64,000 bases of DNA, taken from positions 248,001-312,000 of the IMG/VR virus record IMGVR_UViG_3300047319_001872. One strand, 5' to 3'. A model generated the notes under the pieces. That model saw nothing but the letters and a program-made list of their open reading frames with translations, had not been told where the DNA came from and ran no database searches. Made by a program: the position numbers and the translations under genes. Below are positions 24,659 through 46,522 of this stretch, piece after piece (position 1 is the stretch's first letter; every line of letters starts with the position of its first letter).

Positions 24659-25078
24659 GTGGTCGCGAAGCTCAGCGAACTCATTGCCAACGCCCCCAAG
24701 ATGTGCGTGACCGACACGCGACAGTTGTTGTTGCACCGCTACGAGACGGACTTTGGGATTTACAATCACGACATCTCTGATTTCGAGAAGAATCCCTTAG
24801 CCCTTATCCGGATGCATTCTCGTGAGGATTCATACACGGGTAGTCATCTGGCCGAGCGCATCAGGCAGTATCACGAACGGCAAGTGTGGGAAATCACCCA
24901 CGAACCGTTGAGCGCCTTTCTGAACTATCCGCGCCACATGGTGCTGGACATTTTGGAACTGGCCGACAAGGTGTTGCGGGATAAGACCGCAACGTTGGTG
25001 AAAGAAGGCAAGGTCCTGGAGGACCGTGTCGCCGCGCTGAAGGCCACGAACGGCGACATGACTCCACCACCGCACTAA
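24659..25078 (+). CDS. Conserved chimallivirus hypothetical protein (phiKZ gp76 equivalent)
   Basis: 139 aa with YETDFGIY...PLALIRMH motifs. Confidence 0.65.
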   Translation: MVAKLSELIANAPKMCVTDTRQLLLHRYETDFGIYNHDISDFEKNPLALIRMHSREDSYTGSHLAERIRQYHERQVWEITHEPLSAFLNYPRHMVLDILELADKVLRDKTATLVKEGKVLEDRVAALKATNGDMTPPPH

Positions 25079-25090
25079 CCGGGGCCGTCA

Positions 25091-25543
25091 ATGATCATTT
25101 ACGATGAACCGCGTAACATCTTTGAAGTAACGGAGCAAACGCTCGTTAATCCCGTGAACACGCAAGGTGTCATGGGTGCTGGCTTAGCGTTGGCTTTTCG
25201 CAGTACCTTTCCCGGTCTGTTTGAAGAGTATCGCGACGCTTGCCAGCAGGAGGTGTTTACGCGGCGAGGTTTCTTCGTGTACGACGTTGACGCTTCGCGC
25301 AAGGTGTTGTGTTTGCCCACTAAGCGAGAATGGCGCCATCCTTCGAGACTGGAATGGATCGAAGAAGGCCTTTGGTATTTGTCGAGAGAGTATGAGCACT
25401 ACGGGATTACCTCACTGGCGATTCCTGAGGTAGGCTGCGGGCGAGGTCAGTTAGGATGGGCAGATGTGCGCCCTCTGATCTATCAGTACCTGGACCCTAT
25501 CGCGTTACCAGTGGGGATTTGTTTAAGCCCCTTTGCAGTCTAA
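25091..25543 (+). CDS. Macrodomain protein (ADP-ribosylhydrolase, DarG/Appr-1-p family)
   Basis: LVNPVNTQGVMGAGLALAFR...PTKREWRHPSRLEWIEEGL...SLAIPEVGCGRGQLGW. Confidence 0.9.
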   Translation: MIIYDEPRNIFEVTEQTLVNPVNTQGVMGAGLALAFRSTFPGLFEEYRDACQQEVFTRRGFFVYDVDASRKVLCLPTKREWRHPSRLEWIEEGLWYLSREYEHYGITSLAIPEVGCGRGQLGWADVRPLIYQYLDPIALPVGICLSPFAV

Positions 25544-25559
25544 CTGACTGGGAACGACG

Positions 25560-26018
25560 ATGATCATCTACGAAACAGAGTGCGAACAGTTACGTGCAGA
25601 AGCGCAGACGCTTCTCACGCCCATCAACATCGATGCCGTGGGGGGCGGAGGTTTGCCTGCGGCGTTTCGGTATGGATTCCCCGGACTCTTTAAAGCCTAT
25701 TGCTGGGCCATGAAAAAGGGGATCTTCGAAAACGATAGCCTGTTTGTCTACGACGTGTCGCCCGAGCGGAAAATCGCCTGCATGCCGATGAAGCAGCACC
25801 AGCGGTACAGCACCGAAGAAAAGCTCGAGTACCTCGAAGAAAGTCTGATGGTAGTGGCCACCAGCTACCAGAAGTACGGTATCATCTCCATGGCACTCAA
25901 TGAAATCGGTTACGGTGACACTGCGCTACCATGGGAAAAGGTCAGGCCGGTCATCCAGCGTTGTTTTGGATCGATCGATCTGCCGGTGGGGATTTGTCGG
26001 GGAGTAGTACCTGTGTAA
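25560..26018 (+). CDS. Degenerate macrodomain paralog
   Basis: Colinear with the upstream gene (MIIY..., TLLTPINIDAVGGGGLPAAFR, SMALNEIGYG, IDLPVGIC), with altered catalytic-loop motifs. Confidence 0.8.
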   Translation: MIIYETECEQLRAEAQTLLTPINIDAVGGGGLPAAFRYGFPGLFKAYCWAMKKGIFENDSLFVYDVSPERKIACMPMKQHQRYSTEEKLEYLEESLMVVATSYQKYGIISMALNEIGYGDTALPWEKVRPVIQRCFGSIDLPVGICRGVVPV

Positions 26019-26040
26019 CTATCGCGCCGGAGACCAAACC

Positions 26041-26250
26041 ATGCGATGGCTGATCCAGCAATACCAAGACTGGCGGTTCGCTCGCTACGAGCGAGCTAAG
26101 CTGATCCGTGTCGAAGAAGAGTTGCGTATCCGACGTCAGTTGGACTACCTCGAACAATCCCGTAACGCAACTCGTCCGGGGAAGGTCCTTACGCTCACGG
26201 AAGCGGAGCTGATGGGCCAACAGATGACCGAGCTCAATCGGCGCTGCTAG
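26041..26250 (+). CDS. Small hypothetical protein
   Basis: 69 aa with a GGAG RBS. Confidence 0.6.
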   Translation: MRWLIQQYQDWRFARYERAKLIRVEEELRIRRQLDYLEQSRNATRPGKVLTLTEAELMGQQMTELNRRC

Positions 26251-26263
26251 AAGTACAAGAAGC

Positions 26264-26325
26264 AAAAAAAAAAGACGGGGTCATAGAGCCAGGAGCCCTT
26301 ACGGGTCTCCTGGCTCCTATGCCGT
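26264..26325. terminator. Long hairpin between convergent genes
   Basis: GAGCCAGGAGCCC-TTAC-GGGTCTCCTGGCTC with an A-tract and CATA...TATG flanks. Confidence 0.75.
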
Positions 26326-26331
26326 CAAGGC

Positions 26332-28170
26332 TTAGTCTGATACACCACGATAAAACAACTCGTGCAGACAACCATTGGTGACTTCAGTCCCCGGCTCGTA
26401 GTAATTGACCCCTTTCTCGATACAGTACTGCTTGTCTTCTGGAGCAGGATCAACCGTTACGCGGTAAGCTGGCATCGTCCCACTGCCGCCGTCGAGCATG
26501 ACCAAGATCGAAAACGCCACGCGATCGCAGCGTTCTTTCACCGTCCCGCCATTAGGCGTAGTCGCCCAGTAGTGCGCCTTATCCCGGAACGCTTGTAAGA
26601 ACTCGTCCCGGACTTCGTCTTCTGTCCGCGCCCTGGGTTCGGGCTTCCTCTCCGACATAGACGGGAGCGTATTCAGATACGCACTGGCTTTGGTTTCTAT
26701 TTCAGCTACAGGCTTCTCCCAGATCACAAACGGATCGCTTTCGTCGTCATTGTGGGTAGCATCCGCCGCGGCATTGATCACCGCGTACAGATCGGCGGAA
26801 AGCGCCAAACTGCTCGGACGCGAGTCGGCTACCAGCGGCGAGGTGAGCGCGTCCGCATACGAGGCGAAGTGGCGTTTACCCTGGTAGCTCGATCCGAACA
26901 GCAGGTTGTACTGGATCGACGTATTGCCGAACACTTCCACGTTAAAGAAGAGGCTGCCACCTTCCAAGCCCATGCGCCGCAGATCCGGGAAGATCTCGCG
27001 GTCCATAACACCTTGCACGTGCTTGATGCGCTCCGCCGTATCCATGGTCCCTGCAAAGCCACGGGTATTGAGGAACGTGAAGGCGGTCGGATCTTCTTGA
27101 TCGTGATACGGAATGTCGACCTGGAACTGCGCCGTGGTGAACCCCATCGAGTGGAACAGCGCCGGGATGGTCTGACCCAGATAGACGAGCGCTTGATTCG
27201 CGCGCTCGCTCACTGGGCTGTCTTCTTCGGGACCGGTGTATTCTTCGAAGGCCACGACACCCTTATCCACTACAGCAGGTAGCACCCGCTGCAGGTCTTC
27301 CATGGTGAAGCGACCCGCGAAAGGCCCGCCTTGCACCTGCGCGAGCGCGCGGAAGAACGAATTGAATGACAGCGCAGGCGGCTCCAGGTGAGTGCGCATC
27401 GTGTTGAAGACGAGATCGTTTTTCAACATCTCATCGGGCGCCACGTCCTCGCCCTGCTCCAGTACCTTGAAGTAACACTGCATCAATTCGGCCAGAAAGC
27501 GCGAAGGCAAGACGTGACGACGATGCACATAGCGCGGCAGGGTAGTAACCATCGTGCGTGTATCGACAACATCCTCCGACCCCGCAAAGTCGAAGGCGGA
27601 AAAGTGGGTGGCCACATCCGACGGGCTCACGCGTGTTTCGCGCTTCGTCAAGTCGCCCGAAGCAAGCACGGCGTCAAAGATCAGGTGCTCAGCCGCTTCC
27701 AGACGGCGATGAACGCGATCGCCGTCCACGGTCCTCGTGACCGACGCATGTTCCACCAGACACGAGTTCACGTAGAAGATCACGCCCGACCAATCGATCC
27801 GATCTGCGAGCTGCACCGGCATGCGATTGGTGTAACCGGCGATGTTGTAAATCGAGTTCACACCGATGGGCGAGACATGTTCCACGGCCAACACAAAGGA
27901 AAGCCGTTGTGCCTCCCAACCGCCATCGATGGGGCGCGCAGGCAACATCTTGCTGCCGTAGCTCAGCAGGCCATCCAGTTCACGGGCGACTGAGCGCGCG
28001 GTGATGCGCGTGCCATCGCGCTCGTCCATGAACTTTTTCACACGGGCGATGGATTCCGGCGTGGCTTCACAGACGAGCTGAGGGCGTTGTTGCGCCTTCA
28101 CGCCGTTGACAGTGCGCAGGACGAAGGCACGCAGTGCGTAGGTGCCATACTGCGATTCTTTACCAAACAT
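26332..28170 (-). CDS. PicA/Imp1 paralog with an additional C-terminal domain
   Basis: Start at ATG 28170 (RBS AGGAG). Colinear motif matches to 37092..38621 over about 480 aa, followed by a roughly 100-aa extension. Confidence 0.7.
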   Translation of the reverse strand: MFGKESQYGTYALRAFVLRTVNGVKAQQRPQLVCEATPESIARVKKFMDERDGTRITARSVARELDGLLSYGSKMLPARPIDGGWEAQRLSFVLAVEHVSPIGVNSIYNIAGYTNRMPVQLADRIDWSGVIFYVNSCLVEHASVTRTVDGDRVHRRLEAAEHLIFDAVLASGDLTKRETRVSPSDVATHFSAFDFAGSEDVVDTRTMVTTLPRYVHRRHVLPSRFLAELMQCYFKVLEQGEDVAPDEMLKNDLVFNTMRTHLEPPALSFNSFFRALAQVQGGPFAGRFTMEDLQRVLPAVVDKGVVAFEEYTGPEEDSPVSERANQALVYLGQTIPALFHSMGFTTAQFQVDIPYHDQEDPTAFTFLNTRGFAGTMDTAERIKHVQGVMDREIFPDLRRMGLEGGSLFFNVEVFGNTSIQYNLLFGSSYQGKRHFASYADALTSPLVADSRPSSLALSADLYAVINAAADATHNDDESDPFVIWEKPVAEIETKASAYLNTLPSMSERKPEPRARTEDEVRDEFLQAFRDKAHYWATTPNGGTVKERCDRVAFSILVMLDGGSGTMPAYRVTVDPAPEDKQYCIEKGVNYYEPGTEVTNGCLHELFYRGVSD

Positions 28171-28201
28171 TGTAATCTCCTGTTTTACTCTGGGGTGGGG
28201 G

Positions 28202-28732
28202 TTAGGATACAGCATTCAGAAGGCGCACCACTTCTTCGTAGATTTCGCGAAGCGTGCGGTATTCGTTGCCTTGCGTGAACTCCGAGACGTGATAGAACAC
28301 GCCGTCGTCGGCTTCCAGCTGCTGGGTGAGGATGCGCTCCATTTGGAAGATCCCGTTTTCCTGACCCAGTTCGTTGCACAGGTAGGCGAGCCAGACCAGA
28401 TCGCCCAAGGTGAACGCGTCCTTATTCCAGCGGCGCACGGTCGCCAGTTCGATTTGACGACCCGTCACCGTGCCCTTCCAGACACGGGTATTGGCCTCCA
28501 CGATGTCGATCGCCCGCTCAAACGGATTGAACGAACCACCCCGTTGCCGGAAATCCGACTCGACCACCATGCGGTAGAAGTCGTCGCACTCAAAGGCACT
28601 GTTGCTACGCACTCGTTCGATCTGATGGAGGATCTGGATCGGACCCTTGTGCTCGTTGTAGGTGTAGTCAAAGAAGCCATTGAGCAGCAGGCCGACGTTG
28701 TGGCCGATTTGGTCGAGGCGTTGCGGAATCAT
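28202..28732 (-). CDS. Hypothetical protein
   Basis: 176 aa, coupled to the upstream gene by an ATGA overlap. Confidence 0.7.
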   Translation of the reverse strand: MIPQRLDQIGHNVGLLLNGFFDYTYNEHKGPIQILHQIERVRSNSAFECDDFYRMVVESDFRQRGGSFNPFERAIDIVEANTRVWKGTVTGRQIELATVRRWNKDAFTLGDLVWLAYLCNELGQENGIFQMERILTQQLEADDGVFYHVSEFTQGNEYRTLREIYEEVVRLLNAVS

Positions 28733-29136
28733 TGTTTCTCCTTGGTTTCTTCTTCAAAGTCTTCGAAGCGCAGGCTCGCGGGCGCCTCCGGGTTATTGCC
28801 GTAGAGCATGTTGAACATGCCCCGCTCGTTGATCGTCAGAAAGCACACCGACGTCACCGGTTGTTCTTCGGTCTGCGGTTGAAACGCGACGCTCTCCCAC
28901 AGGTAACCGAACACCGGGGTGGAACTGCCTGCCACCTTGGCGTGACCCGGAATCAGCGTATTCGCCGAGCGCACGTCCTTGACCAGGTTATCGCCCCCCG
29001 CCATGATAACCACGGACTCGAGGAACATGCTCAGCTTCTTGCGCAGCGGATTGCTCGAGGCTTTGCGCTTGAGCAACTCGATGAAGATGTTCGGGTTCGC
29101 TTCCGCGATGCGTTTATGTTCCAGCAGATTCGCCAT
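28729..29136 (-). CDS. Hypothetical protein
   Basis: MANLLEHK... starting at ATG 29136 with RBS AAGGA. Confidence 0.65.
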   Translation of the reverse strand: MANLLEHKRIAEANPNIFIELLKRKASSNPLRKKLSMFLESVVIMAGGDNLVKDVRSANTLIPGHAKVAGSSTPVFGYLWESVAFQPQTEEQPVTSVCFLTINERGMFNMLYGNNPEAPASLRFEDFEEETKEKQ

Positions 29137-29211
29137 TTGCGTTCCTTGGTTTTTTAGGGGCATAGGGCCAGGAGTTTCCCCCTGGCCCCGTTCTTCCCTG
29201 ATTACCTGTAG

Positions 29212-32888: not shown

Positions 32889-35114
32889 TTAAGCGGCCAG
32901 TTTCTGGCGCGGCGTGTAACCTTGTTCGGCCTGCTCGTACACGAACTTCCAGCCGCCGCATTGCGCGACGTGCCGTACGAGTTGGAGCGGCTTGGAACCG
33001 CCCAGTGGCACGATGCTACGATCGACCACCTTCTCGATCCCGGTAGGTTTGTCGGCCCGCAGGATTTGCTCGAGGATATGCTTGTGCGTGAACGGATTGT
33101 TGTTGCGATCCAGAATGTCGGCCGTAATGCGTGCGCCTGCATACGACACGGCAATCCGAACTTCCGCCTCACCCCAGGCCCGAATCGCCTGCGTACGCGT
33201 GGGCGCTGCGTACTTGTCGGCATTGGTAACCTGAGAAAGCACCCCAAAGTGCTGCAGCTTACCCGAGGACACCGCCGTCCAGTCATCAGCGATCTTTTCC
33301 AGGATGATGATGTAGACCGAAGCAATCCGCACTGGCTTCTTGGTCACCACCTTCTTGCCTGAGTTGCCGGTATATGCTACCGGACCATACACAGGCGGAT
33401 ACTGCTCCTGGATCGCCCGCACCATCGGGATATACGCCGGGTCGTTTTCCGGTGGCATGAAGAGCTGCAAGCCATCTGCATTCTCAATCGTGCCGTCGTG
33501 GTGCTTGATGATGTGGATCACACTGGCTAAGTGCTCGACGCGTGGGCGCGTATACGAGCCCGTCATGAACCAGCTATGTTGCAACGGGCTCACGATGGCA
33601 TAATAGCCCATCAAGTACTCCCAGACTTCGTCGATCAGCTGGGGCTGTTCGATTTCCATCTGTGCCAGCTTCTTCGTGAGCATGTACTCCGGGTCGGTGC
33701 GATCCACCCCGAGCTTTGCCACGATGCGCTTCATCACGTCACGCGAAGCCGCATTGATGTAGGGCTCGTACAGACGACCGTAATTCATGCGGTTCACGGT
33801 GGACTCACCCGAGACGATGATGTCCGCGCGATTGCCATGTTCGTCGATCGGCATTTCATGCGGTTCGCAGATCTTGCAGATCACACCCTTGCCGCCGAAG
33901 CAGTCCGTCAGCTTAAAGCCGATGGTCGGGGTGATTTCATACTCGATCACGAATTCCACCCGCCAATCATCGAGCGGGGCCTGACGATAGAGCTTCTTGA
34001 TGGATTCGCTCGGGCTGGCGCTGTTCTTGCCGACCACACTGAGGGCTTCCACCACCAACCGATGAAACTCCGGCGACAGCCGCGGCTTGCCATCGGCATA
34101 CTTCGACTTCTGGGAGTTATACAGCTGGATGATTTCCTGATAGAACTCGCGCCGAGCGCGGTCATACCGGGAAGGCTGCGTGTCCATGCCTTCGGGCACA
34201 TTGGTGTTCTGGTTATTCGCATCGTGATGCACGCGAATGTCCACCACCTTGCCGCCAGTCGGCACATAAGTCGCCTTGTCGAACGTGAAGTCCGGACGCC
34301 GCAACGCCGCTGCCGACTGTTCCACCACGGCCAGACTTTCGTCGTAGCTGCGCAGCATCATCAGCAACCCATCTTCACGCACCATTTCGCCGATGTCCGG
34401 AAACGACTTGTACTTCTTATAGTCGCCATACAGGTTCAGCGGAAAGCGCTTGCTGCCCCACTCGACCACGCGGGTTTCATACGTCTTGAAGCTGAAACGA
34501 TCCAGCACGTCGCGCGAGATCACGATGCCGTCCTCAGCCACGCCCGGAATCGACATGTAGGCCACGTTACACTGCACGCCGTACTTGTAGTCACCATCCG
34601 CAGTCACAGACGGGGAATCCAAGAACACCTCACCTTCTTGGATTTCCGCGCCTTGCACCAGCTTACCGCGCGCCGGGCGACTCACAAACGGAAAACCGAA
34701 ATACTGATGCTGTGAACAAAAGCGCGGCATGTTGATCATGCCGATTTCGCTGCCGCCTTCGGTGGTTTTGAAAATCACCACTTGTTGCGGATTTTGCCAC
34801 TGGTCCTGAATGATCGAATCCGCCCCGTAGCTGGTCCGATACCGGTCGATCACTTTCAACACCTGGCCCGTCTTGGGCATTTTCACGTTCCAGGTATACT
34901 TGCCAAACTCACGTTCCATGCCGGTCTGACAGTAACGTGGCGTCGCTCCTTTCACCACCAGCGTCTGACCGATGTGGCTGGAGAACATCTGCTCCCGCGA
35001 AGCAGAGTTGGCCCCCTTCCACGGATTCAACCCACACACACCCAACAGCTGCCGCAGAAGCTGATTAGGTTCCGGAAGCGGTTCATAGACCTTCCGTGCT
35101 GAATGAACGTTCAT
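32889..35114 (-). CDS. Non-virion RNA polymerase beta-like subunit (phiKZ gp71-73 equivalent), uninterrupted
   Basis: SREQMFSSH, EDGIVISR, GFKLTDCFGGKGVI, RMNYGRLYE and RAWGEAEVR motifs. Start taken at ATG 35114. Confidence 0.9.
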   Translation of the reverse strand: MNVHSARKVYEPLPEPNQLLRQLLGVCGLNPWKGANSASREQMFSSHIGQTLVVKGATPRYCQTGMEREFGKYTWNVKMPKTGQVLKVIDRYRTSYGADSIIQDQWQNPQQVVIFKTTEGGSEIGMINMPRFCSQHQYFGFPFVSRPARGKLVQGAEIQEGEVFLDSPSVTADGDYKYGVQCNVAYMSIPGVAEDGIVISRDVLDRFSFKTYETRVVEWGSKRFPLNLYGDYKKYKSFPDIGEMVREDGLLMMLRSYDESLAVVEQSAAALRRPDFTFDKATYVPTGGKVVDIRVHHDANNQNTNVPEGMDTQPSRYDRARREFYQEIIQLYNSQKSKYADGKPRLSPEFHRLVVEALSVVGKNSASPSESIKKLYRQAPLDDWRVEFVIEYEITPTIGFKLTDCFGGKGVICKICEPHEMPIDEHGNRADIIVSGESTVNRMNYGRLYEPYINAASRDVMKRIVAKLGVDRTDPEYMLTKKLAQMEIEQPQLIDEVWEYLMGYYAIVSPLQHSWFMTGSYTRPRVEHLASVIHIIKHHDGTIENADGLQLFMPPENDPAYIPMVRAIQEQYPPVYGPVAYTGNSGKKVVTKKPVRIASVYIIILEKIADDWTAVSSGKLQHFGVLSQVTNADKYAAPTRTQAIRAWGEAEVRIAVSYAGARITADILDRNNNPFTHKHILEQILRADKPTGIEKVVDRSIVPLGGSKPLQLVRHVAQCGGWKFVYEQAEQGYTPRQKLAA

Positions 35115-35697: not shown

Positions 35698-37053
35698 TTA
35701 CAGACGCACTGCCGGTTGCTGATTCCAGCTTCCGCCGCCTTGGTTCCAGCTACCCGCTTGCTGACCCCACTGCTGCTGTTGCGGCTGCCCACCCCACTGA
35801 TTACCCCCACCCCAGCCGGGATTGCCCACCGGACCGACCGGATTGGAGAGCGAGGCGCGTTGCGGCGGCTGCGGTTGCCAGGCCTGACCCGGATTCCAGC
35901 CATGCGAGCTACCGTAACCCACCGCTTGTTGCAGTGCGGGCTTGGAGCGCACGAGCGCTTCGAAGTCCGTACCACCCGTCGCGGTGCGTACCGGCGCACT
36001 GCTGGAGGCCGGAACCGACGGTTGCGCAGCAGGCCAACCCGGTGTGGCGGGCGGAGGCGTAGCCGGGCGCTGCGCTGCCAGCGTAACGCCTGCTGCCCCC
36101 TGAGTCGAGGCACCGGCAGGCGCATTGAAAGCCGTCTGGGTCTGGGTGACCTGTTGTTGCTTCTCGGCTTCCGTCCCCGGTACCGTGCCTTCGTTACCCG
36201 CTTGCATCGGCGTGGAACGAATTTCCGGCAGCAGTTCGTCCAGATTTTCCAGCTGGTCGACCCAGTCCGCGTTCACCAGCAGATTCTCCGGCAAGATGCC
36301 TTCGAAGCGCGAGATCAGATCGTTCAGCGGTGCGGCAATGGCTTTCACCGTCAGCAACAACGCTTCGATGGACGGCGCAATCGTGCTGTTCGAGCCACGG
36401 TTGTACACCCCGGCGATGTCTTGCTCAGGCAGGATGTAGTCCAACAGACCGATCAGGGCTTCACGATCCTTCACGCGCAGCTTCACGCCGTGCAGCTCGT
36501 TTTCGCCCTTCTTCAGTTCGTTGTAGAACGGGAAGTGTGCCACACCCACGCGAGCGTAGCGTTTGTCGCCGACCGTGCCGCCCCGTTTGATGAAGATCGA
36601 CACGAACAGCTTCTGGTGCTGAGTCGCACTGAGGCTATCCATGATTTTCTTCAGCGCAGCGAGCGTCTTCTCGTCGGCGTTCTTCACCTTGGAGAGGAAT
36701 TCGCTTTGCTCGGGGCTGAGCTTGTGCTGCTCGGCCTGGCTGGTGCCCAGTTGCAGGAGCGTATGCACGATGGTGCCAAACACCACGTTCATGCGACCGT
36801 TGATCGCCATGCGAAAGCGCTCGAATACTTCCGATTCGCCGCGCATCACGTTTTCCTGCAACGGATGGAACAGCACCTTGGTGTCCGGGCTCGGATTAGC
36901 CTGGTGTTCGCGCGTGGGCAGAACCAGACGCTTACCCTTCATGGTGAGGGGCTTGCTATCCTTGCTCGTTTTGATCGAGACGCAACCGTCGGTGGTTACG
37001 GTCAACCCTGCCGCATCCAGCACGGCTTCGTAGAACTTCAACATTTTACTCAT
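35698..37053 (-). CDS. Conserved nucleus-block protein (phiKZ gp70 equivalent) with a Q/G/W/P-rich disordered tail
   Basis: 451 aa. KRLVLPT, FHPLQENVMRGESEV motifs. Lies between picA and the nvRNAP beta gene. Confidence 0.7.
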   Translation of the reverse strand: MSKMLKFYEAVLDAAGLTVTTDGCVSIKTSKDSKPLTMKGKRLVLPTREHQANPSPDTKVLFHPLQENVMRGESEVFERFRMAINGRMNVVFGTIVHTLLQLGTSQAEQHKLSPEQSEFLSKVKNADEKTLAALKKIMDSLSATQHQKLFVSIFIKRGGTVGDKRYARVGVAHFPFYNELKKGENELHGVKLRVKDREALIGLLDYILPEQDIAGVYNRGSNSTIAPSIEALLLTVKAIAAPLNDLISRFEGILPENLLVNADWVDQLENLDELLPEIRSTPMQAGNEGTVPGTEAEKQQQVTQTQTAFNAPAGASTQGAAGVTLAAQRPATPPPATPGWPAAQPSVPASSSAPVRTATGGTDFEALVRSKPALQQAVGYGSSHGWNPGQAWQPQPPQRASLSNPVGPVGNPGWGGGNQWGGQPQQQQWGQQAGSWNQGGGSWNQQPAVRL

Positions 37054-37091: not shown

Positions 37092-38621
37092 TTACAGTTG
37101 ACCGAATTGCACCCCGGACGTGCCGTGGTACGACGCACCCGGTGCGATGTCGTTGGAATTCAACACCGCATTAAAGAGGCTATTGAAGTCCGTCGCCAAA
37201 GCGAGCGCGCGCTGATCGTTGTTGGTCACGATCGGCACGAGCAGGGCATCACAGAAGCTCGGCAGCGCGAAGGTCTCGAAAGGTCCACCATTCATCGAGA
37301 TCTCCAGGATCGACTCACCCAGCAAATCGAGCTTCAGGTTGAACGCGTAATCCAGCGTGTTGCTGTACGACACATCGTTCAGCACTTCGTTGGCCACACG
37401 CCACTTGAACTTCTCGATAAACTGCGTCATGTCGATCGTGGTGCCTGCCATCGACGGGAAGTCGCGCATGCCGGAGATGACGATCTGCGGCTCACGGAAT
37501 TCATTGCGGTTCGTACAGTGCACGATGATGTTGGCGATCGCGGACTCGACCATGATAGCCGGGATCGAATGCGCGATGATCGTTGCCACCTGCGTGTACT
37601 GGTTCGAACCACCCCAACCCACTTCACTCGACGTGTTGTTGAAGAAGCCGCCGTGTTGTCCGCCCATCGGATTGATGGGGGACGCTTGCCCCTGATACGA
37701 GAGCAGTGCGATGTCGTCGTCCATCGCGTGCGGGTCCATACGCAGCAGATCGCTGATCGTGAAGGAGTTGCCGTTCTGGCTACCCCGGATCTTGTTGATC
37801 GCGTTCATGAACGGATCTTGCGCCACCGACTGCTCGACCGAATGGCCGCGCGCTTGCGAGAGAATCTGGTCGTGCGACTGACCAAATGCATCGAGCTTCA
37901 TCGCCGTCTGATAGTTTTCAAACAGCGCTGACGCGTAAGCCGTCGTATTGGCATTGCGCCGCCACGACTTTTGCGGCAGTCCCGTGACCAAGGTGCGCGT
38001 ATCGTTCATGTCCGCATTCGTCTCTTGGCCGAGATGGATACGTGTCATGGTCGAATACACATCCGCAGGGCGCATGCGGAATTCCTTGTTCGGCTGATGC
38101 ACGTTCTCCCAGGCATTGTCGACGATCACGTGCGCCGCATCAGCGACGTTGTAATAGTCGCGATTGCCGATCGCGGTGCGGGCCGTGACCCGACGCAGCG
38201 CCATGGTGGAATTCACGTAGAAGAACATGTGCGGGTCGATATTACCCTGCAAGGTCGGATCGAAAAACTCCGAGTAGCCGGTGATGACCTGCGTGATTTC
38301 GACGCCTGCCGGTCCGATGTGGTCCAGCAGCATCATGAAGCGCAGGCGCCGCTCCTGCCAACCGTGCGGAATCACCACTTCTTTTTCGTACGCGGCCGAG
38401 GGCAAGATGAACTGATTTGCCACCCCTGCCAACGATGCCGGAGTAGCCGGTTGCTTCGGGTCCAGCCGGTCCGCCACCAGCTGTTCCACGTTCGGCGTCA
38501 CGACCGTTTCGTACGGTCGACGGTACTGTTGGCCATGACCGCTGGTCTCGACCATGACAAGCTGACGCACGCGAAACTTGTCACCCATCCCGTTACCTAC
38601 GAAGTTGTTCAGCATGTTCAA
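37092..38621 (-). CDS. picA: Phage-nucleus protein import factor PicA (Imp1, phiKZ gp69 equivalent)
   Basis: 509 aa directly downstream of the gp68-like nvRNAP subunit, the syntenic position of picA. QYRRPYET, GWQERRLRFMM and FYVNS motifs. Confidence 0.75.
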   Translation of the reverse strand: MNMLNNFVGNGMGDKFRVRQLVMVETSGHGQQYRRPYETVVTPNVEQLVADRLDPKQPATPASLAGVANQFILPSAAYEKEVVIPHGWQERRLRFMMLLDHIGPAGVEITQVITGYSEFFDPTLQGNIDPHMFFYVNSTMALRRVTARTAIGNRDYYNVADAAHVIVDNAWENVHQPNKEFRMRPADVYSTMTRIHLGQETNADMNDTRTLVTGLPQKSWRRNANTTAYASALFENYQTAMKLDAFGQSHDQILSQARGHSVEQSVAQDPFMNAINKIRGSQNGNSFTISDLLRMDPHAMDDDIALLSYQGQASPINPMGGQHGGFFNNTSSEVGWGGSNQYTQVATIIAHSIPAIMVESAIANIIVHCTNRNEFREPQIVISGMRDFPSMAGTTIDMTQFIEKFKWRVANEVLNDVSYSNTLDYAFNLKLDLLGESILEISMNGGPFETFALPSFCDALLVPIVTNNDQRALALATDFNSLFNAVLNSNDIAPGASYHGTSGVQFGQL

Positions 38622-40186
38622 ACGCTCCTGTTTGCTTGGTTCATTGCGATTTCGATCGACAGTTTTGCCATTTTGATTTTTATATCGTAAGGCACCGCGT
38701 ACCGCCGATCATTGGTGTTTTGGACGACCTTCGCGAGCCATCCCGCGGGCACCGTTAAGCGCCACTCATGTTCGCGAAGTTGCTTGGTCACGTGGTCGAT
38801 GCCCAGTACCGCGACATTCTTTTCCTTTTGTGACTTCTGCTTGCCGGACTGCCGTCGTGCGTGCGGATAGAGCTTATTGAGCTCTTCCACCATGTTCGCC
38901 GGAATCCGGGCTTGGGGGATCACACCGGTCAGCTGCAATTCCTGTGCGTTCGACTGGGCCACTGCTGTCATCAACCCAGCCAGCTCGAAGTGTCCCCGTT
39001 GCCAGAGTACTGCCTGCGCTACTCCCATAGCCTCCAGCACGGATTTCTTCGAGAGATACGGAAAAGCACGGGGACTCACGGCGTCTTCCAGCGTCCACTG
39101 GATCAGCGCCAACTGCGGGTCCCAGATGTGTTCGTTGGTCAGTTGTTTGACCGCATCCAACGATTCCAACAAAATCCCGAGGTTCTCCTTAAGCTCCGGG
39201 CACACACGCAACGCCAGTTTGGTGGTGTCGCTGATGTAGTGCTCGACGATCGCGATGTCGCCTGCGGGAATTTCCTGCTTGACCTTGTAGCCTTCCAACT
39301 TCGAGAGATTGTTTTCGCTATCCCCCGACTGGCTTTCCGGAATCTTCGGCTTGACCATCCCCATGAAACTGTGGTCATGGCCCTTGACCTTTTGGCCCAC
39401 GTAGCGGTAGATAAACGCCACCAGGTTAAAGTCCGGGTCCGTCCCGCTGATGTCGCCAATCGTCAGACGACGAATCACCACCAGCGCCAGCACCCAGGTG
39501 GAAAAGTCTTCCGTGGAAATCCCGTCGAGAATCGCCGAATCGAATTCCTTCGTTTGCGGCAAGCTCAATTCCACGTACTTCTGCAAACGCTCCATCGGCG
39601 GGCACTGACCTTCAGCGAGGATGTACGACTGCGAGAGCAACTGGAACGCCTTGTACTCCTTCCAGTTGGTCCCGTGTTCCTTCTCGGTGCGAAACACATA
39701 CTCGCCCCACACCAACAGCATCGGCCGCAGTACGACGCTCAATACCACGAGCTGTTTATAGTCTTCGCGCAGATAGGTACGATCTCGCGTACCGATGGCG
39801 CTGTGACTGTCGCCGTATTCCTCATTGAGGTTGTGCGGCATGGCAATGTCGCTGTGGAAATCAATCCACGAGCGAACATCGTCGAGCTTGTGCAGTGCGC
39901 ACAACTCTGCGATCTGGGGCAAGAGCGCACGGGCCAGATCCTCGGTTTCCCAGATCTCGTCGAAGGTGATGTGAATGCGCTTGTACACCTCGAAGATCTT
40001 ATCCTGGGCTTCCGCTGGCTGCTTCTCCCAGAACCCATTGATCTGGTGGAAGATGTCCACATCAGGCTTGATCGACGCCTTATCAATCAGCTTGATATTC
40101 CACTTCAGTTCCTGATCACGGTGACGTAGGAGCGCAACCGTCTGGTCTCCCAGATGGCCTTCCCGTTCGGTGACTACACGCATCAT
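38618..40186 (-). CDS. Non-virion RNAP fifth subunit (phiKZ gp68 equivalent)
   Basis: Start at ATG 40186 (RBS AGGAG), about 520 aa. TYLREDY..L..LS..LRPM..VWGEY motif. Synteny chmC-gp68-picA. Confidence 0.75.
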   Translation of the reverse strand: MMRVVTEREGHLGDQTVALLRHRDQELKWNIKLIDKASIKPDVDIFHQINGFWEKQPAEAQDKIFEVYKRIHITFDEIWETEDLARALLPQIAELCALHKLDDVRSWIDFHSDIAMPHNLNEEYGDSHSAIGTRDRTYLREDYKQLVVLSVVLRPMLLVWGEYVFRTEKEHGTNWKEYKAFQLLSQSYILAEGQCPPMERLQKYVELSLPQTKEFDSAILDGISTEDFSTWVLALVVIRRLTIGDISGTDPDFNLVAFIYRYVGQKVKGHDHSFMGMVKPKIPESQSGDSENNLSKLEGYKVKQEIPAGDIAIVEHYISDTTKLALRVCPELKENLGILLESLDAVKQLTNEHIWDPQLALIQWTLEDAVSPRAFPYLSKKSVLEAMGVAQAVLWQRGHFELAGLMTAVAQSNAQELQLTGVIPQARIPANMVEELNKLYPHARRQSGKQKSQKEKNVAVLGIDHVTKQLREHEWRLTVPAGWLAKVVQNTNDRRYAVPYDIKIKMAKLSIEIAMNQANRSV

Positions 40187-40238
40187 TTTCTCCTGCGTAA
40201 TAAACGTTGTAACGACTCTTTGGATACTGCTCAGTGTA

Positions 40239-40267
40239 GTAATATAGGTTTTCAACGAGTTTGAATC
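40239..40267 (-). promoter_or_regulatory. Early promoter, bipartite
   Basis: GATTCAAA-N12-CTATATTAC on the minus strand. Confidence 0.75.
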
Positions 40268-40388: not shown

Positions 40389-41156
40389 TTAGAAGGGCAG
40401 GTCGTCCCCGGCGCCATCGCTGCCACCAGCGAAGCCCGAATCGTTACCGCCGCCACCGCCACCGCCGCGGTTATATCCGCCGCCACCGCCTTGACCGCCA
40501 CCGCGGTTGTAACCACCACCGCCGCCACCGCCACGATTGAAGCCACCGCCACCCTGACCGCCTTCCTTCGGAATCGGTTCTTCCCAGTGCGAGACTTGCA
40601 TGTGCGCGAGCATCTCGGTGAGAATGTTCCAGTACGCTTCAGCGGCGACCTTCGACGCTTCGGCCGCCGAGTAGTACTCGCCCGTGCCGTGCTTGAGCAA
40701 ATGGAAGTCCGAAAGCTGGAAGTTGAACTTGATGCGCGGCCGATCCTTGGCCATCACACCCATCCACAACACGCCTTCCTTGTCCTTGCCGACGAACAGT
40801 TCGGACTGCACCACCGGCTTTTCGCTGCGCTTGCCGCCGGGGAAGATGAAGTTCTTGTTCTCGATCGAGTTCTTGAACTCGTCCTTGCCGCCCGTGCCGG
40901 GAATGAAGTCGATCGCTTGACGCAGCAGGTTCAGGAAGCCGTAGAATGCGGGCGTGTCCATGTTCGCGCTGATCTTGCCGTAGTTCGTATCGCGGTCGCT
41001 GTCCACGTTCGTGTAAACGGTGATACGCGGGTTGTTCGCGAAAAGCCCCCACTGGAGCGACGCGAATTTGCCTTCCTGGTTCTTCGCCGACATCTGCAGC
41101 TTCTTGTTGTCGAGCGGAGTCTTCTTGCGCGGTGCTGCTTTGAAATCGCCTGCCAT
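40389..41156 (-). CDS. chmC: Nucleus-associated RNA-binding protein ChmC
   Basis: 255 aa: folded N-terminal domain plus an RGG/Gly-rich tail. Immediately upstream of the gp68-like gene, the syntenic position of chmC. Confidence 0.7.
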   Translation of the reverse strand: MAGDFKAAPRKKTPLDNKKLQMSAKNQEGKFASLQWGLFANNPRITVYTNVDSDRDTNYGKISANMDTPAFYGFLNLLRQAIDFIPGTGGKDEFKNSIENKNFIFPGGKRSEKPVVQSELFVGKDKEGVLWMGVMAKDRPRIKFNFQLSDFHLLKHGTGEYYSAAEASKVAAEAYWNILTEMLAHMQVSHWEEPIPKEGGQGGGGFNRGGGGGGGYNRGGGQGGGGGYNRGGGGGGGNDSGFAGGSDGAGDDLPF

Positions 41157-44400: not shown

Positions 44401-45039
44401 CTACAGCTTGCTGGCGTACGGCGATGTCGGATCTTCCCCGCCATCTGCGATCAAAGCGTTCATGGCATCCCAGCACTTGAAAATATCGTGCTGTTCGAGC
44501 AGATGCAAGTAACGATCGCCTTCGACCGGTTCGTCGAAGAAGAATTCCACATGGAAGCCCCCCTCTTCGTGACCGTCCTTATCTTTTACCACAGGCGTCT
44601 GGACGAAGCCATGCGCGGCCATCTGGTAATCATAGTGCTGCCATCCGATCTTGCCCGGATGCATGTCCACGTAGGTTTCCGAATAGCCGTCAATCCGTTG
44701 GTCGTTATACATCTCCCGCACGACCGGATTAGCCACCAAGAAACGCTGCATCGAAAGCGGTGCCTGCTGAAAGGCACCCATCTCCCAGATGCTACGAATC
44801 TCGTCGCGCTGCCACATGTGAGACACCATGCGCACGGCGGCCTTTGCACGTCGGAAGGCTTCGCTATTGCCAAAGCGCTCCCACGCACTGCGGGCCGTCT
44901 CCATGAAACCCTGACCAAACCCCGCCATCGAGCTCGACATGTTGTCGAACTGATTTTGCAGATAGCTCATGGTTCCCGGATGGGGCTCATGATAAATCAC
45001 AGCGTCAAAGACGTCTGCACCTCCTGTAATTACTCGCAC
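44401..45039 (-). CDS. Conserved chimallivirus protein (phiKZ gp59-like position)
   Basis: 212 aa with MQRFLVANP...RIDGYSETY...DPTS motifs. RBS GAGG. Confidence 0.7.
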   Translation of the reverse strand: MRVITGGADVFDAVIYHEPHPGTMSYLQNQFDNMSSSMAGFGQGFMETARSAWERFGNSEAFRRAKAAVRMVSHMWQRDEIRSIWEMGAFQQAPLSMQRFLVANPVVREMYNDQRIDGYSETYVDMHPGKIGWQHYDYQMAAHGFVQTPVVKDKDGHEEGGFHVEFFFDEPVEGDRYLHLLEQHDIFKCWDAMNALIADGGEDPTSPYASKL

Positions 45040-45052
45040 GATGTCCTCCTCG

Positions 45053-46522
45053 TTAAGCGGCTTCAGCCAACAACATCATCTTGTTCCACTTGGCTTGATC
45101 CACCGATTCGTCCGTGTCATGCAAGAAGTTCGCCGTGGTGGCAATCACCGGTTTAGGTTGCGCGAGGTTACTCGACACCTTCTTCGGCTGGTCGAGACCA
45201 AACGTGCTCTTATGCGGCGCCAGGGCCCGCAGTTCTTCGGTCGTGTAGTTATCCAGACACGGCGTGAAGTTCAGCTGGTCACCATCGAAGTCCGCGTTCA
45301 AGCCCTTCACGTCCAGAATACTGATCGAGACGGTCGGGATCTCCACCACAGACTTCACTTGCGTCACATACACGAGCTGCGCCGAGCCGCGTTCCAACGA
45401 GGGGTTACGCTGCATGATACACGGAATGCCTTTGTACGGACATTCTGCGATCAGCTCCTGGAACAACTGATCCAGGTCCTCGTTGTAAATCGACGCGTGC
45501 TTGTTCAGGAACGCGATTCCTTCGTTCGGTGTGTAACCACGCCGTATCAGCTTATTCATCAAGTGGATACGGAACACCGACAGACCGATCCCCCACGGAA
45601 TGTGGATTTCCTCGTAATCGTGCGCATCCGTCAACGACGAGATCACGGCACGGAACGAGAAGTGGGAACGAGAGCCGAACACGTGCTTACGGAAAATCCC
45701 CTGCTTCTTGGCGAGCGTGGTCTTATACAGACCCTCGTAAAACTCCGCCAATTGCGAGATCGTCTTCACGGTCCGATTCTCTTTCACACGCACGGTGTGA
45801 GAGGTCAGGGAGGAATCGATGCCTGCCATCATGCGAATCGCATCCACCGCACCGGTGATGATGGGGTCCACATAGGTGCCGACGTTGCTCTCCTCGATCA
45901 CGAGAAGCGCCCGGTTCGGCAAGGGCAGGTGATCGCTAAACACGCAGTCCCGTTGATTGCGTATCGCCGTCATGAGCTCCAGATGCTCCTCACTCTTGCG
46001 ATACTCCTTGAGATCCATGAGCAACGCCATGATCTCGTCGAACTTGTTCACGAAGTTGTTCAACCCGCGCGGGCAGTTCAACTCCTCCAGCCGATACACG
46101 ACCTGGGGCTTACGCACCGGCGGCGCGTAGTTCGTGTCACAAATCCAGCGAATGATCTCATAACCACTGCGGGTGAATCGCTTCTTCAACATCATCCACA
46201 CGATCGGGTTGATCAGGCCATCGACGCCTTTCGGCCTTCTGATCCACACGATCGGTTCGAGGTCACGCTCCACATGCGAGCGGACTTCTGTGCCGCAGGA
46301 GCCACATACCACACCGACGTTGTAGCCACCAACGATCTCCCCACATTCGCACGACGGCAGATTGCTCAGCAAATCGCCCGAATAGGTGGTATAGATCAGT
46401 CGGTTAAACTCTTGCCGATCCTTCTCCGATGATTCCGCAATCTCGTTGATGATCTTCGGCTCGCGCGTCGAGTGCTGGTAAAACAGCTCGTTGAAATTGA
46501 TCAAACTGAGTCTTACGCCCAC
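45053..46522 (-). CDS. Non-virion RNAP beta' catalytic subunit (phiKZ gp55-56 equivalent), uninterrupted
   Basis: N-terminal Zn ribbon (CECG...CGSC), QRNPSLERG and the catalytic NADFDGD motif. Confidence 0.95.
   Translation of the reverse strand: MGVRLSLINFNELFYQHSTREPKIINEIAESSEKDRQEFNRLIYTTYSGDLLSNLPSCECGEIVGGYNVGVVCGSCGTEVRSHVERDLEPIVWIRRPKGVDGLINPIVWMMLKKRFTRSGYEIIRWICDTNYAPPVRKPQVVYRLEELNCPRGLNNFVNKFDEIMALLMDLKEYRKSEEHLELMTAIRNQRDCVFSDHLPLPNRALLVIEESNVGTYVDPIITGAVDAIRMMAGIDSSLTSHTVRVKENRTVKTISQLAEFYEGLYKTTLAKKQGIFRKHVFGSRSHFSFRAVISSLTDAHDYEEIHIPWGIGLSVFRIHLMNKLIRRGYTPNEGIAFLNKHASIYNEDLDQLFQELIAECPYKGIPCIMQRNPSLERGSAQLVYVTQVKSVVEIPTVSISILDVKGLNADFDGDQLNFTPCLDNYTTEELRALAPHKSTFGLDQPKKVSSNLAQPKPVIATTANFLHDTDESVDQAKWNKMMLLAEAA

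What the first reader, a model, noticed from the sequence alone, without database searches (positions are those of the whole stretch)
26332..28170. Second, full-length PicA (nuclear import factor) paralog with a fused C-terminal domain
Seen, as colinear matches to 37092..38621 (paralog / PicA): GGWEAQRLSFVLAVEHVSPIGV / HGWQERRLRFMMLLDHIGPAGV; IFYVNS / FFYVNS; VSPSDV / MRPADV; VVDTRTMVTTLPRYVHRR / MNDTRTLVTGLPQKSWRR; RFTMEDLQR / SFTISDLLR; GQTIPALF / AHSIPAIM; FASYADALTSPLV / LPSFCDALLVPIV; LSADLYAVINAA / LATDFNSLFNAV. An extra ~100-aa domain follows (DEFLQAFRDKAHYW...AFSILVMLDGGSG...PEDK...LHELFY). Known: PicA/Imp1 is an essential selectivity gate for protein import through the chimallin shell. 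Inference: an alternative import adaptor with different cargo specificity, a gate modulator, or a decoy. It could alter which host defence nucleases or rival-phage proteins enter the nucleus.
Basis: partly seen in the sequence, partly recalled or inferred. Interest (0 to 1): 0.8.

Follow-up and report, generated by a model that had tools for sequence, protein, structure and literature searches.

The report
Second PicA-like gene, recently fused
A jumbo phage that builds a protein "nucleus" carries its normal import gatekeeper PicA plus a second, fast-evolving copy, which in this strain a one-base insertion has joined to a small neighbouring gene of unknown function; no such second copy turned up in the papers searched, and its role is still inference.

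Summary
Window 26332..28170 (-) encodes a 612-aa protein. Residues 1-480 are a full-length homologue of the phage's own PicA/Imp1 (37092..38621), with BLASTP E 1e-25. Both hit phrog_3141, and the AlphaFold model matches PicA orthologue models (TM 0.86).

The neighbour really is PicA. It hits phiKZ gp69 and PhiPA3 gp63 and lies in the conserved ChmA-Imp3-Imp6-gp68-PicA-gp70 order.

The second copy is not a recent duplicate. It belongs to a deep, separate branch of the family and has lost residues that are invariant in canonical PicA. It sits in a variable islet next to two AdfM-like macrodomain genes. Its dN is about 10 times that of PicA, yet it is under purifying selection (dN/dS 0.19). It is present in several uncultivated FLC9-like phages and absent from FLC9 and every isolated phage searched.

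The "fused domain" is a separate, overlapping 125-aa gene in the sister strain. A 1-nt insertion at 26710 fused it here. The fused allele is identical in several independent assemblies, so it is real. The domain belongs to a large family of ~100-aa stand-alone phage proteins with no known fold or function.

The parts
26332..28170 (-). Fused ORF, 612 aa plus stop (TAA 26332-26334): PicA-like domain, linker and small-protein domain
28177..28180 (-). GGAG ribosome-binding site 6 nt upstream of the ATG at 28170 (the conserved start; the upstream ATG at 28215 overlaps the end of the preceding gene and is absent from all homologues)
26731..28170 (-). PicA/Imp1-like domain (aa 1-480); AlphaFold pLDDT mostly above 90
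   Evidence: BLASTP E 1e-25 to the resident PicA; phrog_3141 E 8e-23; model; Foldseek top 15 hits are all PicA orthologues, best TM 0.86
26644..26730 (-). Low-confidence linker (aa 481-509) made of the old C-terminal tail of the paralogue plus the old N-terminus of the small gene
   Evidence: pLDDT below 50; alignments
26710..26710 (-). Single inserted base (T on the coding strand) relative to the sister strain. It puts the 125-aa gene in frame. The next codon, GTA (26707-26709), replaces the sister strain's GTG start codon
   Evidence: no indel in independent contigs
26335..26709 (-). Former stand-alone 125-aa gene (aa 488-612; folded helical core about aa 510-608, 26347-26643). Member of a large family of ~100-aa phage proteins of unknown function
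26264..26326 (-). Strong hairpin (-37 kcal/mol, z -5.8) followed by U10: an intrinsic terminator just after the stop, between convergent genes
   Evidence: sequence
37092..38621 (-). Resident canonical PicA/Imp1 orthologue (reference for the paralogy; 72% identical to FLC9 gp373)
25091..26018 (+). Two tandem macrodomain genes (150 and 152 aa) convergent with the paralogue. The first is an AdfM homologue (PhiPA3 gp108, E 2e-16). AdfM is a known PicA-dependent nuclear cargo in phiKZ. Context only, no link shown
   Evidence: PMC13309987

Best explanation
Shown: the gene encodes an accessory, diverged member of the PicA/Imp1 family in an uncultivated FLC9-like nucleus-forming jumbo phage. That phage also has the canonical PicA, ChmA, Imp3 and Imp6. 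In this strain a 1-nt insertion has fused the gene in frame to the small gene that follows it in the sister strain. Inferred: the PicA-like domain keeps the PicA fold and so probably still docks at the import site of the chimallin shell. It has lost several residues that are invariant in canonical PicA, and its surface evolves quickly. It therefore most likely acts as an auxiliary or modulating import factor with its own cargo or partner specificity, not as a redundant PicA. This would suit an arms-race gene that tunes what enters the nucleus. Under this reading the fusion tethers a small accessory phage protein of unknown activity to it through a flexible linker. The fusion is recent and may be neutral.
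For: Family membership and fold. Nucleus and import machinery in the same window. Gene maintained by selection: dN/dS 0.19 against L002 with dS like its neighbours. At least 12 divergent cluster representatives form one clade (99% support); the six whose contigs were read, and the closer relatives, sit in the same slot of 310-327 kb relatives that also carry canonical PicA. Changed function: dN is 10 times that of PicA (0.074 against 0.007). Canonical invariants are replaced: R35 to P, R184 to S, S219 to V, N371 to I; W336 is lost; P454 is A in all 12. Accessory status: absent from FLC9 and L009 and from all INPHARED phages. Published work shows PicA recognises cargo through several surface interfaces that co-evolve with cargo, and that extra cargo-specific factors exist (Imp2, 4, 5, 7). 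Fusion real. Linker disordered, both domains confidently folded.
Against: There is no localisation, interaction or expression data, and the phage is uncultivated. Loss of residues invariant in every canonical PicA could mean it no longer binds the shell, Imp6 or Imp3. C-terminal tagging of phiKZ Imp1 gave an inactive protein, so a 125-aa C-terminal addition might impair rather than extend the function. The fused allele shows no sequence diversity, so selection for the fused state cannot be assessed. The small domain has no recognisable fold or function, and here it carries Ala at a position that is His in at least 90% of the family.
Confidence: 0.45

Rival explanations
1. Decoy or competition factor. 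The PicA-like protein binds cargo or shell components non-productively. It would block entry of host defence proteins that mimic cargo, or sabotage or exclude a co-infecting rival chimallivirus, rather than import anything itself.
For: Patchy distribution, a variable islet and fast protein evolution are typical of conflict genes. Residues invariant in canonical PicA are lost while the fold is kept. The copy clusters away from the resident PicA, together with PicA-like proteins of other jumbo-phage lineages, which is compatible with capture from another phage. Import is species-specific between related phages (PMC11087766).
Against: Nothing shows binding of foreign cargo or of the shell. dN/dS 0.19 shows mainly purifying selection, and no positive selection was demonstrated. 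Co-infection biology of these phages is unknown.
Confidence: 0.2
2. The paralogue has a role unrelated to protein import (for example another shell-associated or structural job). The fusion to the small gene is an incidental, neutral or mildly harmful frameshift in one successful strain.
For: The biochemical activity of the PicA fold is unknown and has no solved relatives. Canonical invariants are lost. The fusion is found only in one near-clonal allele. The sister strain keeps two genes, and most clade members have no small gene at all.
Against: Homology covers the whole PicA length and most family-conserved positions are kept (39 of 68). The only function known for this family is import.
Confidence: 0.2
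3. The second copy is a decaying duplicate (a pseudogene in the making).
For: It is dispensable in FLC9 and L009, and its protein divergence is higher than that of core genes.
Against: The ORF is intact in every relative. dN/dS is 0.19. The gene has persisted across lineages whose helicase-like neighbour is only 63% identical. It has a strong RBS and a terminator, and the fold is predicted with high confidence.
Confidence: 0.05
4. The fusion is a sequencing or assembly artefact.
For: It rests on a single base.
Against: The site is not a homopolymer. Contigs from three runs (depths 49, 18 and 4.5) span it with no mismatch or gap. Two JGI assemblies from other samples give the identical 612-aa ORF, and the split form is equally reproducible in four other contigs. 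The former GTG start is also changed to GTA.
Confidence: 0.02

Closest known systems
PicA / Imp1 (phiKZ gp69, PhiPA3 gp63; here 37092..38621)
   Same: Homologous over the full length (E 1e-25 to the resident copy). Same predicted fold (TM up to 0.86 to orthologue models). Encoded by a phage with ChmA, Imp3 and Imp6. 39 of 68 family-conserved positions are kept.
   Different: Not in the gp68-PicA-gp70 synteny. It sits 9 kb away in a variable islet. It is accessory (absent from FLC9 and all isolated phages searched). It evolves about 10 times faster at the protein level. It lacks canonical invariants (R35, R184, S219, N371, W336, P454). It lies on a separate deep branch, and an AU test rejects grouping with the resident PicA. 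In this strain it carries an extra C-terminal domain.
Split allele in the sister strain (L002: 489-aa paralogue plus overlapping 125-aa gene)
   Same: Same slot and same two coding units. 86% and 74% identity. The flanking core genes are 97-100% identical.
   Different: Two genes with a stop (TAG) and an overlapping GTG start. The window has one extra base and GTA, giving a single 612-aa protein. The small-gene part has dS 1.7 against 0.15-0.3 in the slow-evolving neighbours, so the two strains carry different, recombined alleles of it.
Family of ~100-aa stand-alone phage proteins (phrog_29367; e.g. Acinetobacter phage AB1 gp38, Klebsiella phage VLCpiP4b P4b_00043)
   Same: The C-terminal 125 aa match at 43-47% identity. 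Family invariants E32, W48, D73, G74 and H116 are kept. Same predicted five-helix structure.
   Different: Elsewhere it is a free small protein, often in arrays of small genes and in phages without a nucleus. Here it is tethered to a PicA-like protein. The near-invariant His89 is Ala here and in L002.
Cargo-specific import co-factors of phiKZ (Imp2, Imp4, Imp5, Imp7)
   Same: They set a precedent that lineage-restricted accessory proteins tune which cargo PicA/Imp1 imports. That is the role proposed here.
   Different: No sequence relationship was tested or claimed. Those factors are not PicA homologues.

Membership tests
PicA/Imp1 protein family (homology, phrog_3141) | Significant full-length sequence similarity to family members or the family profile | tested here: met
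   BLASTP E 1e-25 to the resident PicA. phrog_3141 E 7.7e-23 covering profile positions 6-494 of 510. A profile of the paralogue clade retrieves 906 family representatives.
PicA/Imp1 protein family (homology, phrog_3141) | Same three-dimensional fold as PicA orthologues | tested here: met
   AlphaFold model with pLDDT above 90 over aa 10-480. The top 15 Foldseek BFVD hits are all PicA orthologues, E 1e-31 to 6e-20, TM by target 0.69-0.86. Both sides are predictions.
PicA/Imp1 protein family (homology, phrog_3141) | Encoded by a phage that also encodes chimallin (ChmA) | tested here: met
   ChmA homologue at 46736-48271, plus Imp3, Imp6, gp68 and gp70.
Canonical PicA orthologue (core import factor) | Conserved position between the gp68-like and gp70-like genes | tested here: not met
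   The paralogue lies between a 176-aa gene and a convergent 69-aa gene, 9 kb from that cluster. 37092..38621 occupies the canonical position.
Canonical PicA orthologue (core import factor) | Residues invariant across canonical PicA (R35, G115, N137, G152, R184, P185, D187, D207, S219, N371, D458 in the resident PicA's numbering) | tested here: not met
   7 of 11 are kept. R35 to P, R184 to S, S219 to V and N371 to I in the window protein. R35 is lost in all 12 clade members.
Canonical PicA orthologue (core import factor) | Groups with the resident or lineage PicA in a family tree; single-copy core gene present in all relatives | tested here: not met
   Separate branch (SH-aLRT 98-99). The AU test rejects one clade with FLC9-like PicA, p 4.6e-5. 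Absent from FLC9 and L009.
Canonical PicA orthologue (core import factor) | Forms puncta on the nuclear shell, binds Imp6, needed for cargo import, essential | not testable with these tools
   These are experimental properties reported for phiKZ, PhiPA3 and Goslar.
Small stand-alone phage protein family (phrog_29367-like) | Sequence similarity over the ~100-aa core, with the family's invariant residues | tested here: met
   phrog_29367 E 6e-8. tblastn 43-47% identity, E 1e-16. A family profile finds 810 clusters. E32, W48, D73, G74 and H116 are kept, while the near-invariant H89 is Ala.
Small stand-alone phage protein family (phrog_29367-like) | Known fold or biochemical function | tested here: inconclusive
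   Confident model (pLDDT 90), but no Pfam hit, no PDB match (VIA best Z 5.4, within noise), and only uncharacterised AFDB and Atlas clusters.

The most novel reading that the evidence does not exclude
PicA-like paralogues form a previously unrecognised second branch of the phage-nucleus import family. Under this reading they are interchangeable, fast-evolving 'specificity modules' in conflict islets, next to AdfM-like anti-defence cargo genes. They would open a second, separately tuned import route, or close the gate to mimics and rival phages. In this strain the module would have captured a small effector by gene fusion and so placed it at the import site of the shell.
Probability: 0.15. Interest if true: 0.8.

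Novelty: new variant of a known kind. Interest (0 to 1): 0.55.

Why it matters
PicA/Imp1 is described as a single-copy, essential core gene that decides which proteins enter the phage nucleus. How it gains and changes specificity is an open question. A naturally occurring second, diverged copy keeps the fold, drops otherwise invariant residues and varies strongly between close relatives. It therefore acts as a natural experiment: comparing the two copies could separate the parts of PicA needed for docking and translocation from those that read cargo. The fused and split alleles in sister strains offer a ready-made pair for testing whether tethering a small protein to the import machinery matters. 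If the copy controls entry of anti-defence cargo or excludes competitors, it would add a new layer to phage-host and phage-phage conflict. The limit is that all carriers are uncultivated soil and rhizosphere phages, so tests need heterologous systems or a cultivable relative such as FLC9 on Burkholderia glumae.

Tried and rejected
1. Assembly artefact for the fusion: rejected.

2. The slot-mate gene in FLC9 (gp365, 208 aa) as a remnant of the paralogue or of the small domain: no similarity.

3. The upstream 144-aa gene and FLC9 gp367 as relatives of the C-terminal domain: only 15-19% identity in a forced alignment, so not related.

4. Recent duplication of the resident PicA: rejected by tree and AU test. 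Caveats: the group was defined after seeing a first tree, and the branches are long.

5. Known fold or function for PicA or for the small domain: no Pfam hit, no PDB sequence hit, no Foldseek PDB hit. VIA-align best Z values of 6.1 and 5.4 are within noise. A weak EndoU_bacteria Pfam hit (E 0.15) for the L002 small protein is below threshold and was ignored.

6. Mapping phiKZ import-mutant positions onto the paralogue: the positions are variable in all groups and uninformative.

7. Strict co-occurrence of the paralogue with the macrodomain pair: rejected. FLC9 and L009-type contigs keep the pair without the paralogue.

8. Testing whether the related PicA-like genes of other jumbo contigs (P0022, P0048, P0052) coexist with a canonical PicA: not achieved.

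Full report
THE GENE AND THE PARALOGY

The window has an ORF at 26332..28215 on the minus strand. All homologues start at its 16th codon. That ATG (28170) has a GGAG six bases upstream.

BLASTP against the product of 37092..38621 gives E 1e-25, with 23% identity over 423 colinear residues. Both proteins match PHROG 3141 along almost the whole profile. Neither has a Pfam hit. The listed motif matches are therefore part of a genuine, end-to-end homology.

THE NEIGHBOUR IS PICA AND THE PHAGE IS A CHIMALLIVIRUS

tblastn of 37092..38621 finds one place in each of 149 jumbo phages, including PHIKZ069 (5e-30) and PhiPA3 063. PMC11087766 names these proteins PicA, and the Kokontis preprint calls the same protein Imp1.

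phiKZ proteins map colinearly on the window's minus strand:
- DNA polymerase: 54917-57022
- ChmA: 46736-48271
- gp55: 45281-46522
- Imp3/gp59: 44404-45021
- Imp6/gp67: 40581-41093
- gp68: 38636-40123
- PicA: 37161-38591
- gp70: 36286-36951
- gp71: 33891-35048

The closest isolated phage is Burkholderia phage FLC9 (PicA 72% identical). The window's genome matches a 313-kb IMG/VR contig from rhizosphere metagenomes.

STRUCTURE

An AlphaFold2 model of the 612-aa protein, built from a 90-row alignment, has mean pLDDT 87.9.
- Residues 10-480 are mostly above 90.
- Residues 481-509 are below 50 and form a linker.
- Residues 510-608 form a separate helical domain.

The 15 best Foldseek matches in BFVD are all PicA orthologues. 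E values run from 1e-31 to 6e-20, and TM by target reaches 0.86 for RSF1.

No solved structure resembles the PicA fold. This agrees with the published statement that searches with Imp1 found nothing of known function.

DISTRIBUTION AND SYNTENY

A word-index search of 5.8 billion proteins finds only four close homologues, 86, 68, 62 and 44% identical. All are 477-489 aa and all lack the C-terminal part.

A profile search of 1.84 billion representatives finds 906 family members. In trees, the window protein and 11 further representatives form one clade with 99% support.

Every member whose contig I could read sits in the same slot. The slot comes after a helicase-like 510-aa gene and two or three small genes, and before a convergent ~69-aa gene and two macrodomain genes. 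The contigs include 310-327 kb contigs that also carry canonical PicA about 10 kb upstream.

FLC9 has an unrelated 208-aa gene in that slot and no second PicA-like gene anywhere. L009-type contigs also lack it. No record in the 50,697-phage collection shows two matching places. I found no mention of a PicA/Imp1 paralogue in the papers searched.

ORIGIN

In an IQ-TREE mixture-model tree the paralogue clade joins two other clades of PicA-like proteins on one side of a well-supported branch (98%). All canonical PicAs (phiKZ, PhiPA3, RSF1, SURPRISE13, FLC9 and the window's own) lie on the other side.

Forcing the paralogue clade together with the FLC9-like PicAs costs 76 log-likelihood units, with AU p 4.6e-5. 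Two caveats apply: the group was named after seeing a tree, and the branches are long.

So the copy is not a recent in-lineage duplicate. It is either an old duplicate or was acquired from another lineage.

The two allied clades (P0022, P0048, P0052) lie in a DHFR-BubE small-gene region of other 285-327 kb jumbo contigs, not between gp68- and gp70-like genes. They keep the canonical hallmark residues. Whether those genomes also hold a canonical PicA could not be tested.

MODE OF EVOLUTION

Against the sister strain L002, core genes including PicA are 97-100% identical, with dN/dS of 0.00-0.05.

| Gene | Identity to L002 | dN | dS | dN/dS |
|---|---|---|---|---|
| Paralogue | 86.4% | 0.074 | 0.38 | 0.19 |
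| PicA | 98.6% | 0.007 | 0.17 | 0.04 |

The paralogue's dS is like that of its neighbours. The gene is therefore under purifying selection but changes about ten times faster than PicA at the protein level. Several neighbours do the same (the 176-aa gene, the 69-aa gene, the second macrodomain gene and the 139-aa gene), so this is a variable islet.

At greater distance the contrast grows. In L010 the helicase-like neighbour is 63% identical, but the slot's PicA-like protein is only 26% identical.

Of 68 positions conserved in at least 70% of canonical PicAs, the window paralogue keeps 39. Of the 11 invariant ones it keeps 7 and replaces R35, R184, S219 and N371. R35 is lost in all 12 clade members. 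W336 is lost, and P454 is Ala throughout the clade.

Residues that never vary among canonical PicAs of very different phages are more likely to serve shared partners or mechanism than lineage-specific cargo (inference). Their loss therefore argues for a changed job, not a redundant one.

THE "FUSED DOMAIN"

In L002 and three other contigs, the paralogue ends after 489 aa. A 125-aa gene starts with GTG 13 nt before that stop, in another frame. Its product is 74% identical to the window's residues 488-612.

The DNA alignment shows one extra base in the window (T at 26710 on the coding strand), and GTA where L002 has the GTG start. L010 has the small gene as a separate, non-overlapping ORF. Six other relatives have no small gene after the paralogue. 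L009 has a copy elsewhere in the islet.

The fusion is genuine:
- Contigs of three runs (depth 49, 18 and 4.5) cross the site without mismatch or gap.
- Two JGI assemblies from other samples encode the identical 612-aa protein.

One run also holds a short contig in which the small-gene region is replaced by 181 other bases. That indicates a co-occurring strain without the small gene.

The small-gene part has dS 1.7 against L002. It is 83-87% identical to the copies in L010 and L009, whose core genes are far more distant. So this module is exchanged by recombination.

WHAT THE SMALL DOMAIN IS

It belongs to a large family: 810 clusters at E up to 1e-3, nearly all ~100-aa free-standing proteins with no Pfam domain. 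Members occur in Schitoviridae and other phages not identified as nucleus-forming, in arrays of small unannotated genes. Distant members occur in other jumbo phages.

The model is confident (pLDDT 90.4, five helices), but it matches nothing of known function.

The family has invariant E32, W48, D73, G74 and H116, and near-invariant H89 and D92. That pattern suggests a binding or catalytic site (inference). The window and L002 alleles have Ala at position 89.

MECHANISM

Published work shows the following:
- PicA/Imp1 sits in puncta on the chimallin shell.
- It reads folded cargo through several distinct surfaces that co-evolve with the cargo.
- It binds Imp6 and depends on Imp3.
- Lineage-restricted helpers (Imp2, Imp4, Imp5, Imp7) assist it.

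Given a conserved fold, selective maintenance, loss of canonical invariants, rapid change and patchy presence in a conflict-type islet, the best-supported reading is an auxiliary or modulating import factor with its own specificity (confidence about 0.45).

The rivals are a decoy or competition factor (0.2) and a non-import role with an incidental fusion (0.2). Decay (0.05) and artefact (0.02) are disfavoured.

The adjacent tandem macrodomain genes deserve attention. The first is an AdfM homologue, and AdfM is a PicA-dependent nuclear anti-DarT factor. But the macrodomain pair also exists without the paralogue, so no dependency is shown.

The fusion would tether the small protein to wherever the PicA-like domain goes. 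C-terminally tagged phiKZ Imp1 was inactive, so the fusion could also be a tolerated impairment.

VERDICT

This is a new variant of a known kind: an undescribed, diverged PicA-like paralogue lineage, with a strain-specific gene fusion. Interest is moderate to high for phage-nucleus biology, limited by the lack of any functional data and by the uncultivated hosts.

Noticed in passing
window 33891-57022 (-): The whole phiKZ-type nucleus, import and nvRNAP block is present and colinear: DNA polymerase, ChmA, gp55, Imp3, Imp6, gp68, PicA, gp70, gp71. The gp68-like ORF (38618..40255) overlaps the PicA ORF by 4 nt.
   Followed up: partly
window 25091-25543 and 25560-26018 (+): Tandem macrodomain genes. 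The first is an AdfM (anti-DarT) homologue and is 98.7% identical to the L002 copy. The second is diverged and evolves fast (86% identical, dN/dS 0.14). FLC9 also has two copies.
   Followed up: partly
window 24659-29163: A variable islet. Against the sister strain L002, the 176-aa gene (28202..28732), the 69-aa gene (26041..26250) and the 139-aa gene (24659..25078) are only 81-87% identical, while flanking core genes are 97-100% identical. None has a known function.
   Followed up: partly
window 26264 (intergenic T/A run): One run's contig (X1, depth 49) has one base fewer in the T10 run of the terminator between the convergent genes. This is homopolymer length variation or an assembly difference, and it lies outside any ORF.
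   Followed up: no
run X5, contig joining window 26334 to 26900: A 277-nt contig replaces the 565-nt small-gene region with 181 other bases. A strain lacking the 125-aa module seems to co-occur with the fused strain in the same sample.
   Followed up: no
L025 7704-9107, L026 10001-11467, L027 10001-11413: Other jumbo-phage contigs (up to 327 kb) carry PicA-like genes in a DHFR-BubE region of small genes, not between gp68- and gp70-like genes. They group with the window's paralogue clade in the tree but keep the canonical hallmark residues. Whether they are second copies or relocated canonical PicAs is unknown.
   Followed up: partly
L021 16382-17125: A GIY-YIG (homing-endonuclease type) gene is inserted in a relative between genes that are adjacent in the other FLC9-like contigs.
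   Followed up: no
BFVD entry A0A1L7N194 (Ralstonia phage RP12): A PicA orthologue is named 'Major capsid protein' in the UniProt-derived description. This is probably a misannotation.
   Followed up: no
model residues 322-424 of the paralogue (window about 26899-27207): The weak VIA-align matches of one PicA subdomain are to the EsaD-EsaG complex entry 8guo and to BH3703 (Z 6.1 and 5.0). Both are below the tool's stated noise level, so this is only a lead.
   Followed up: no
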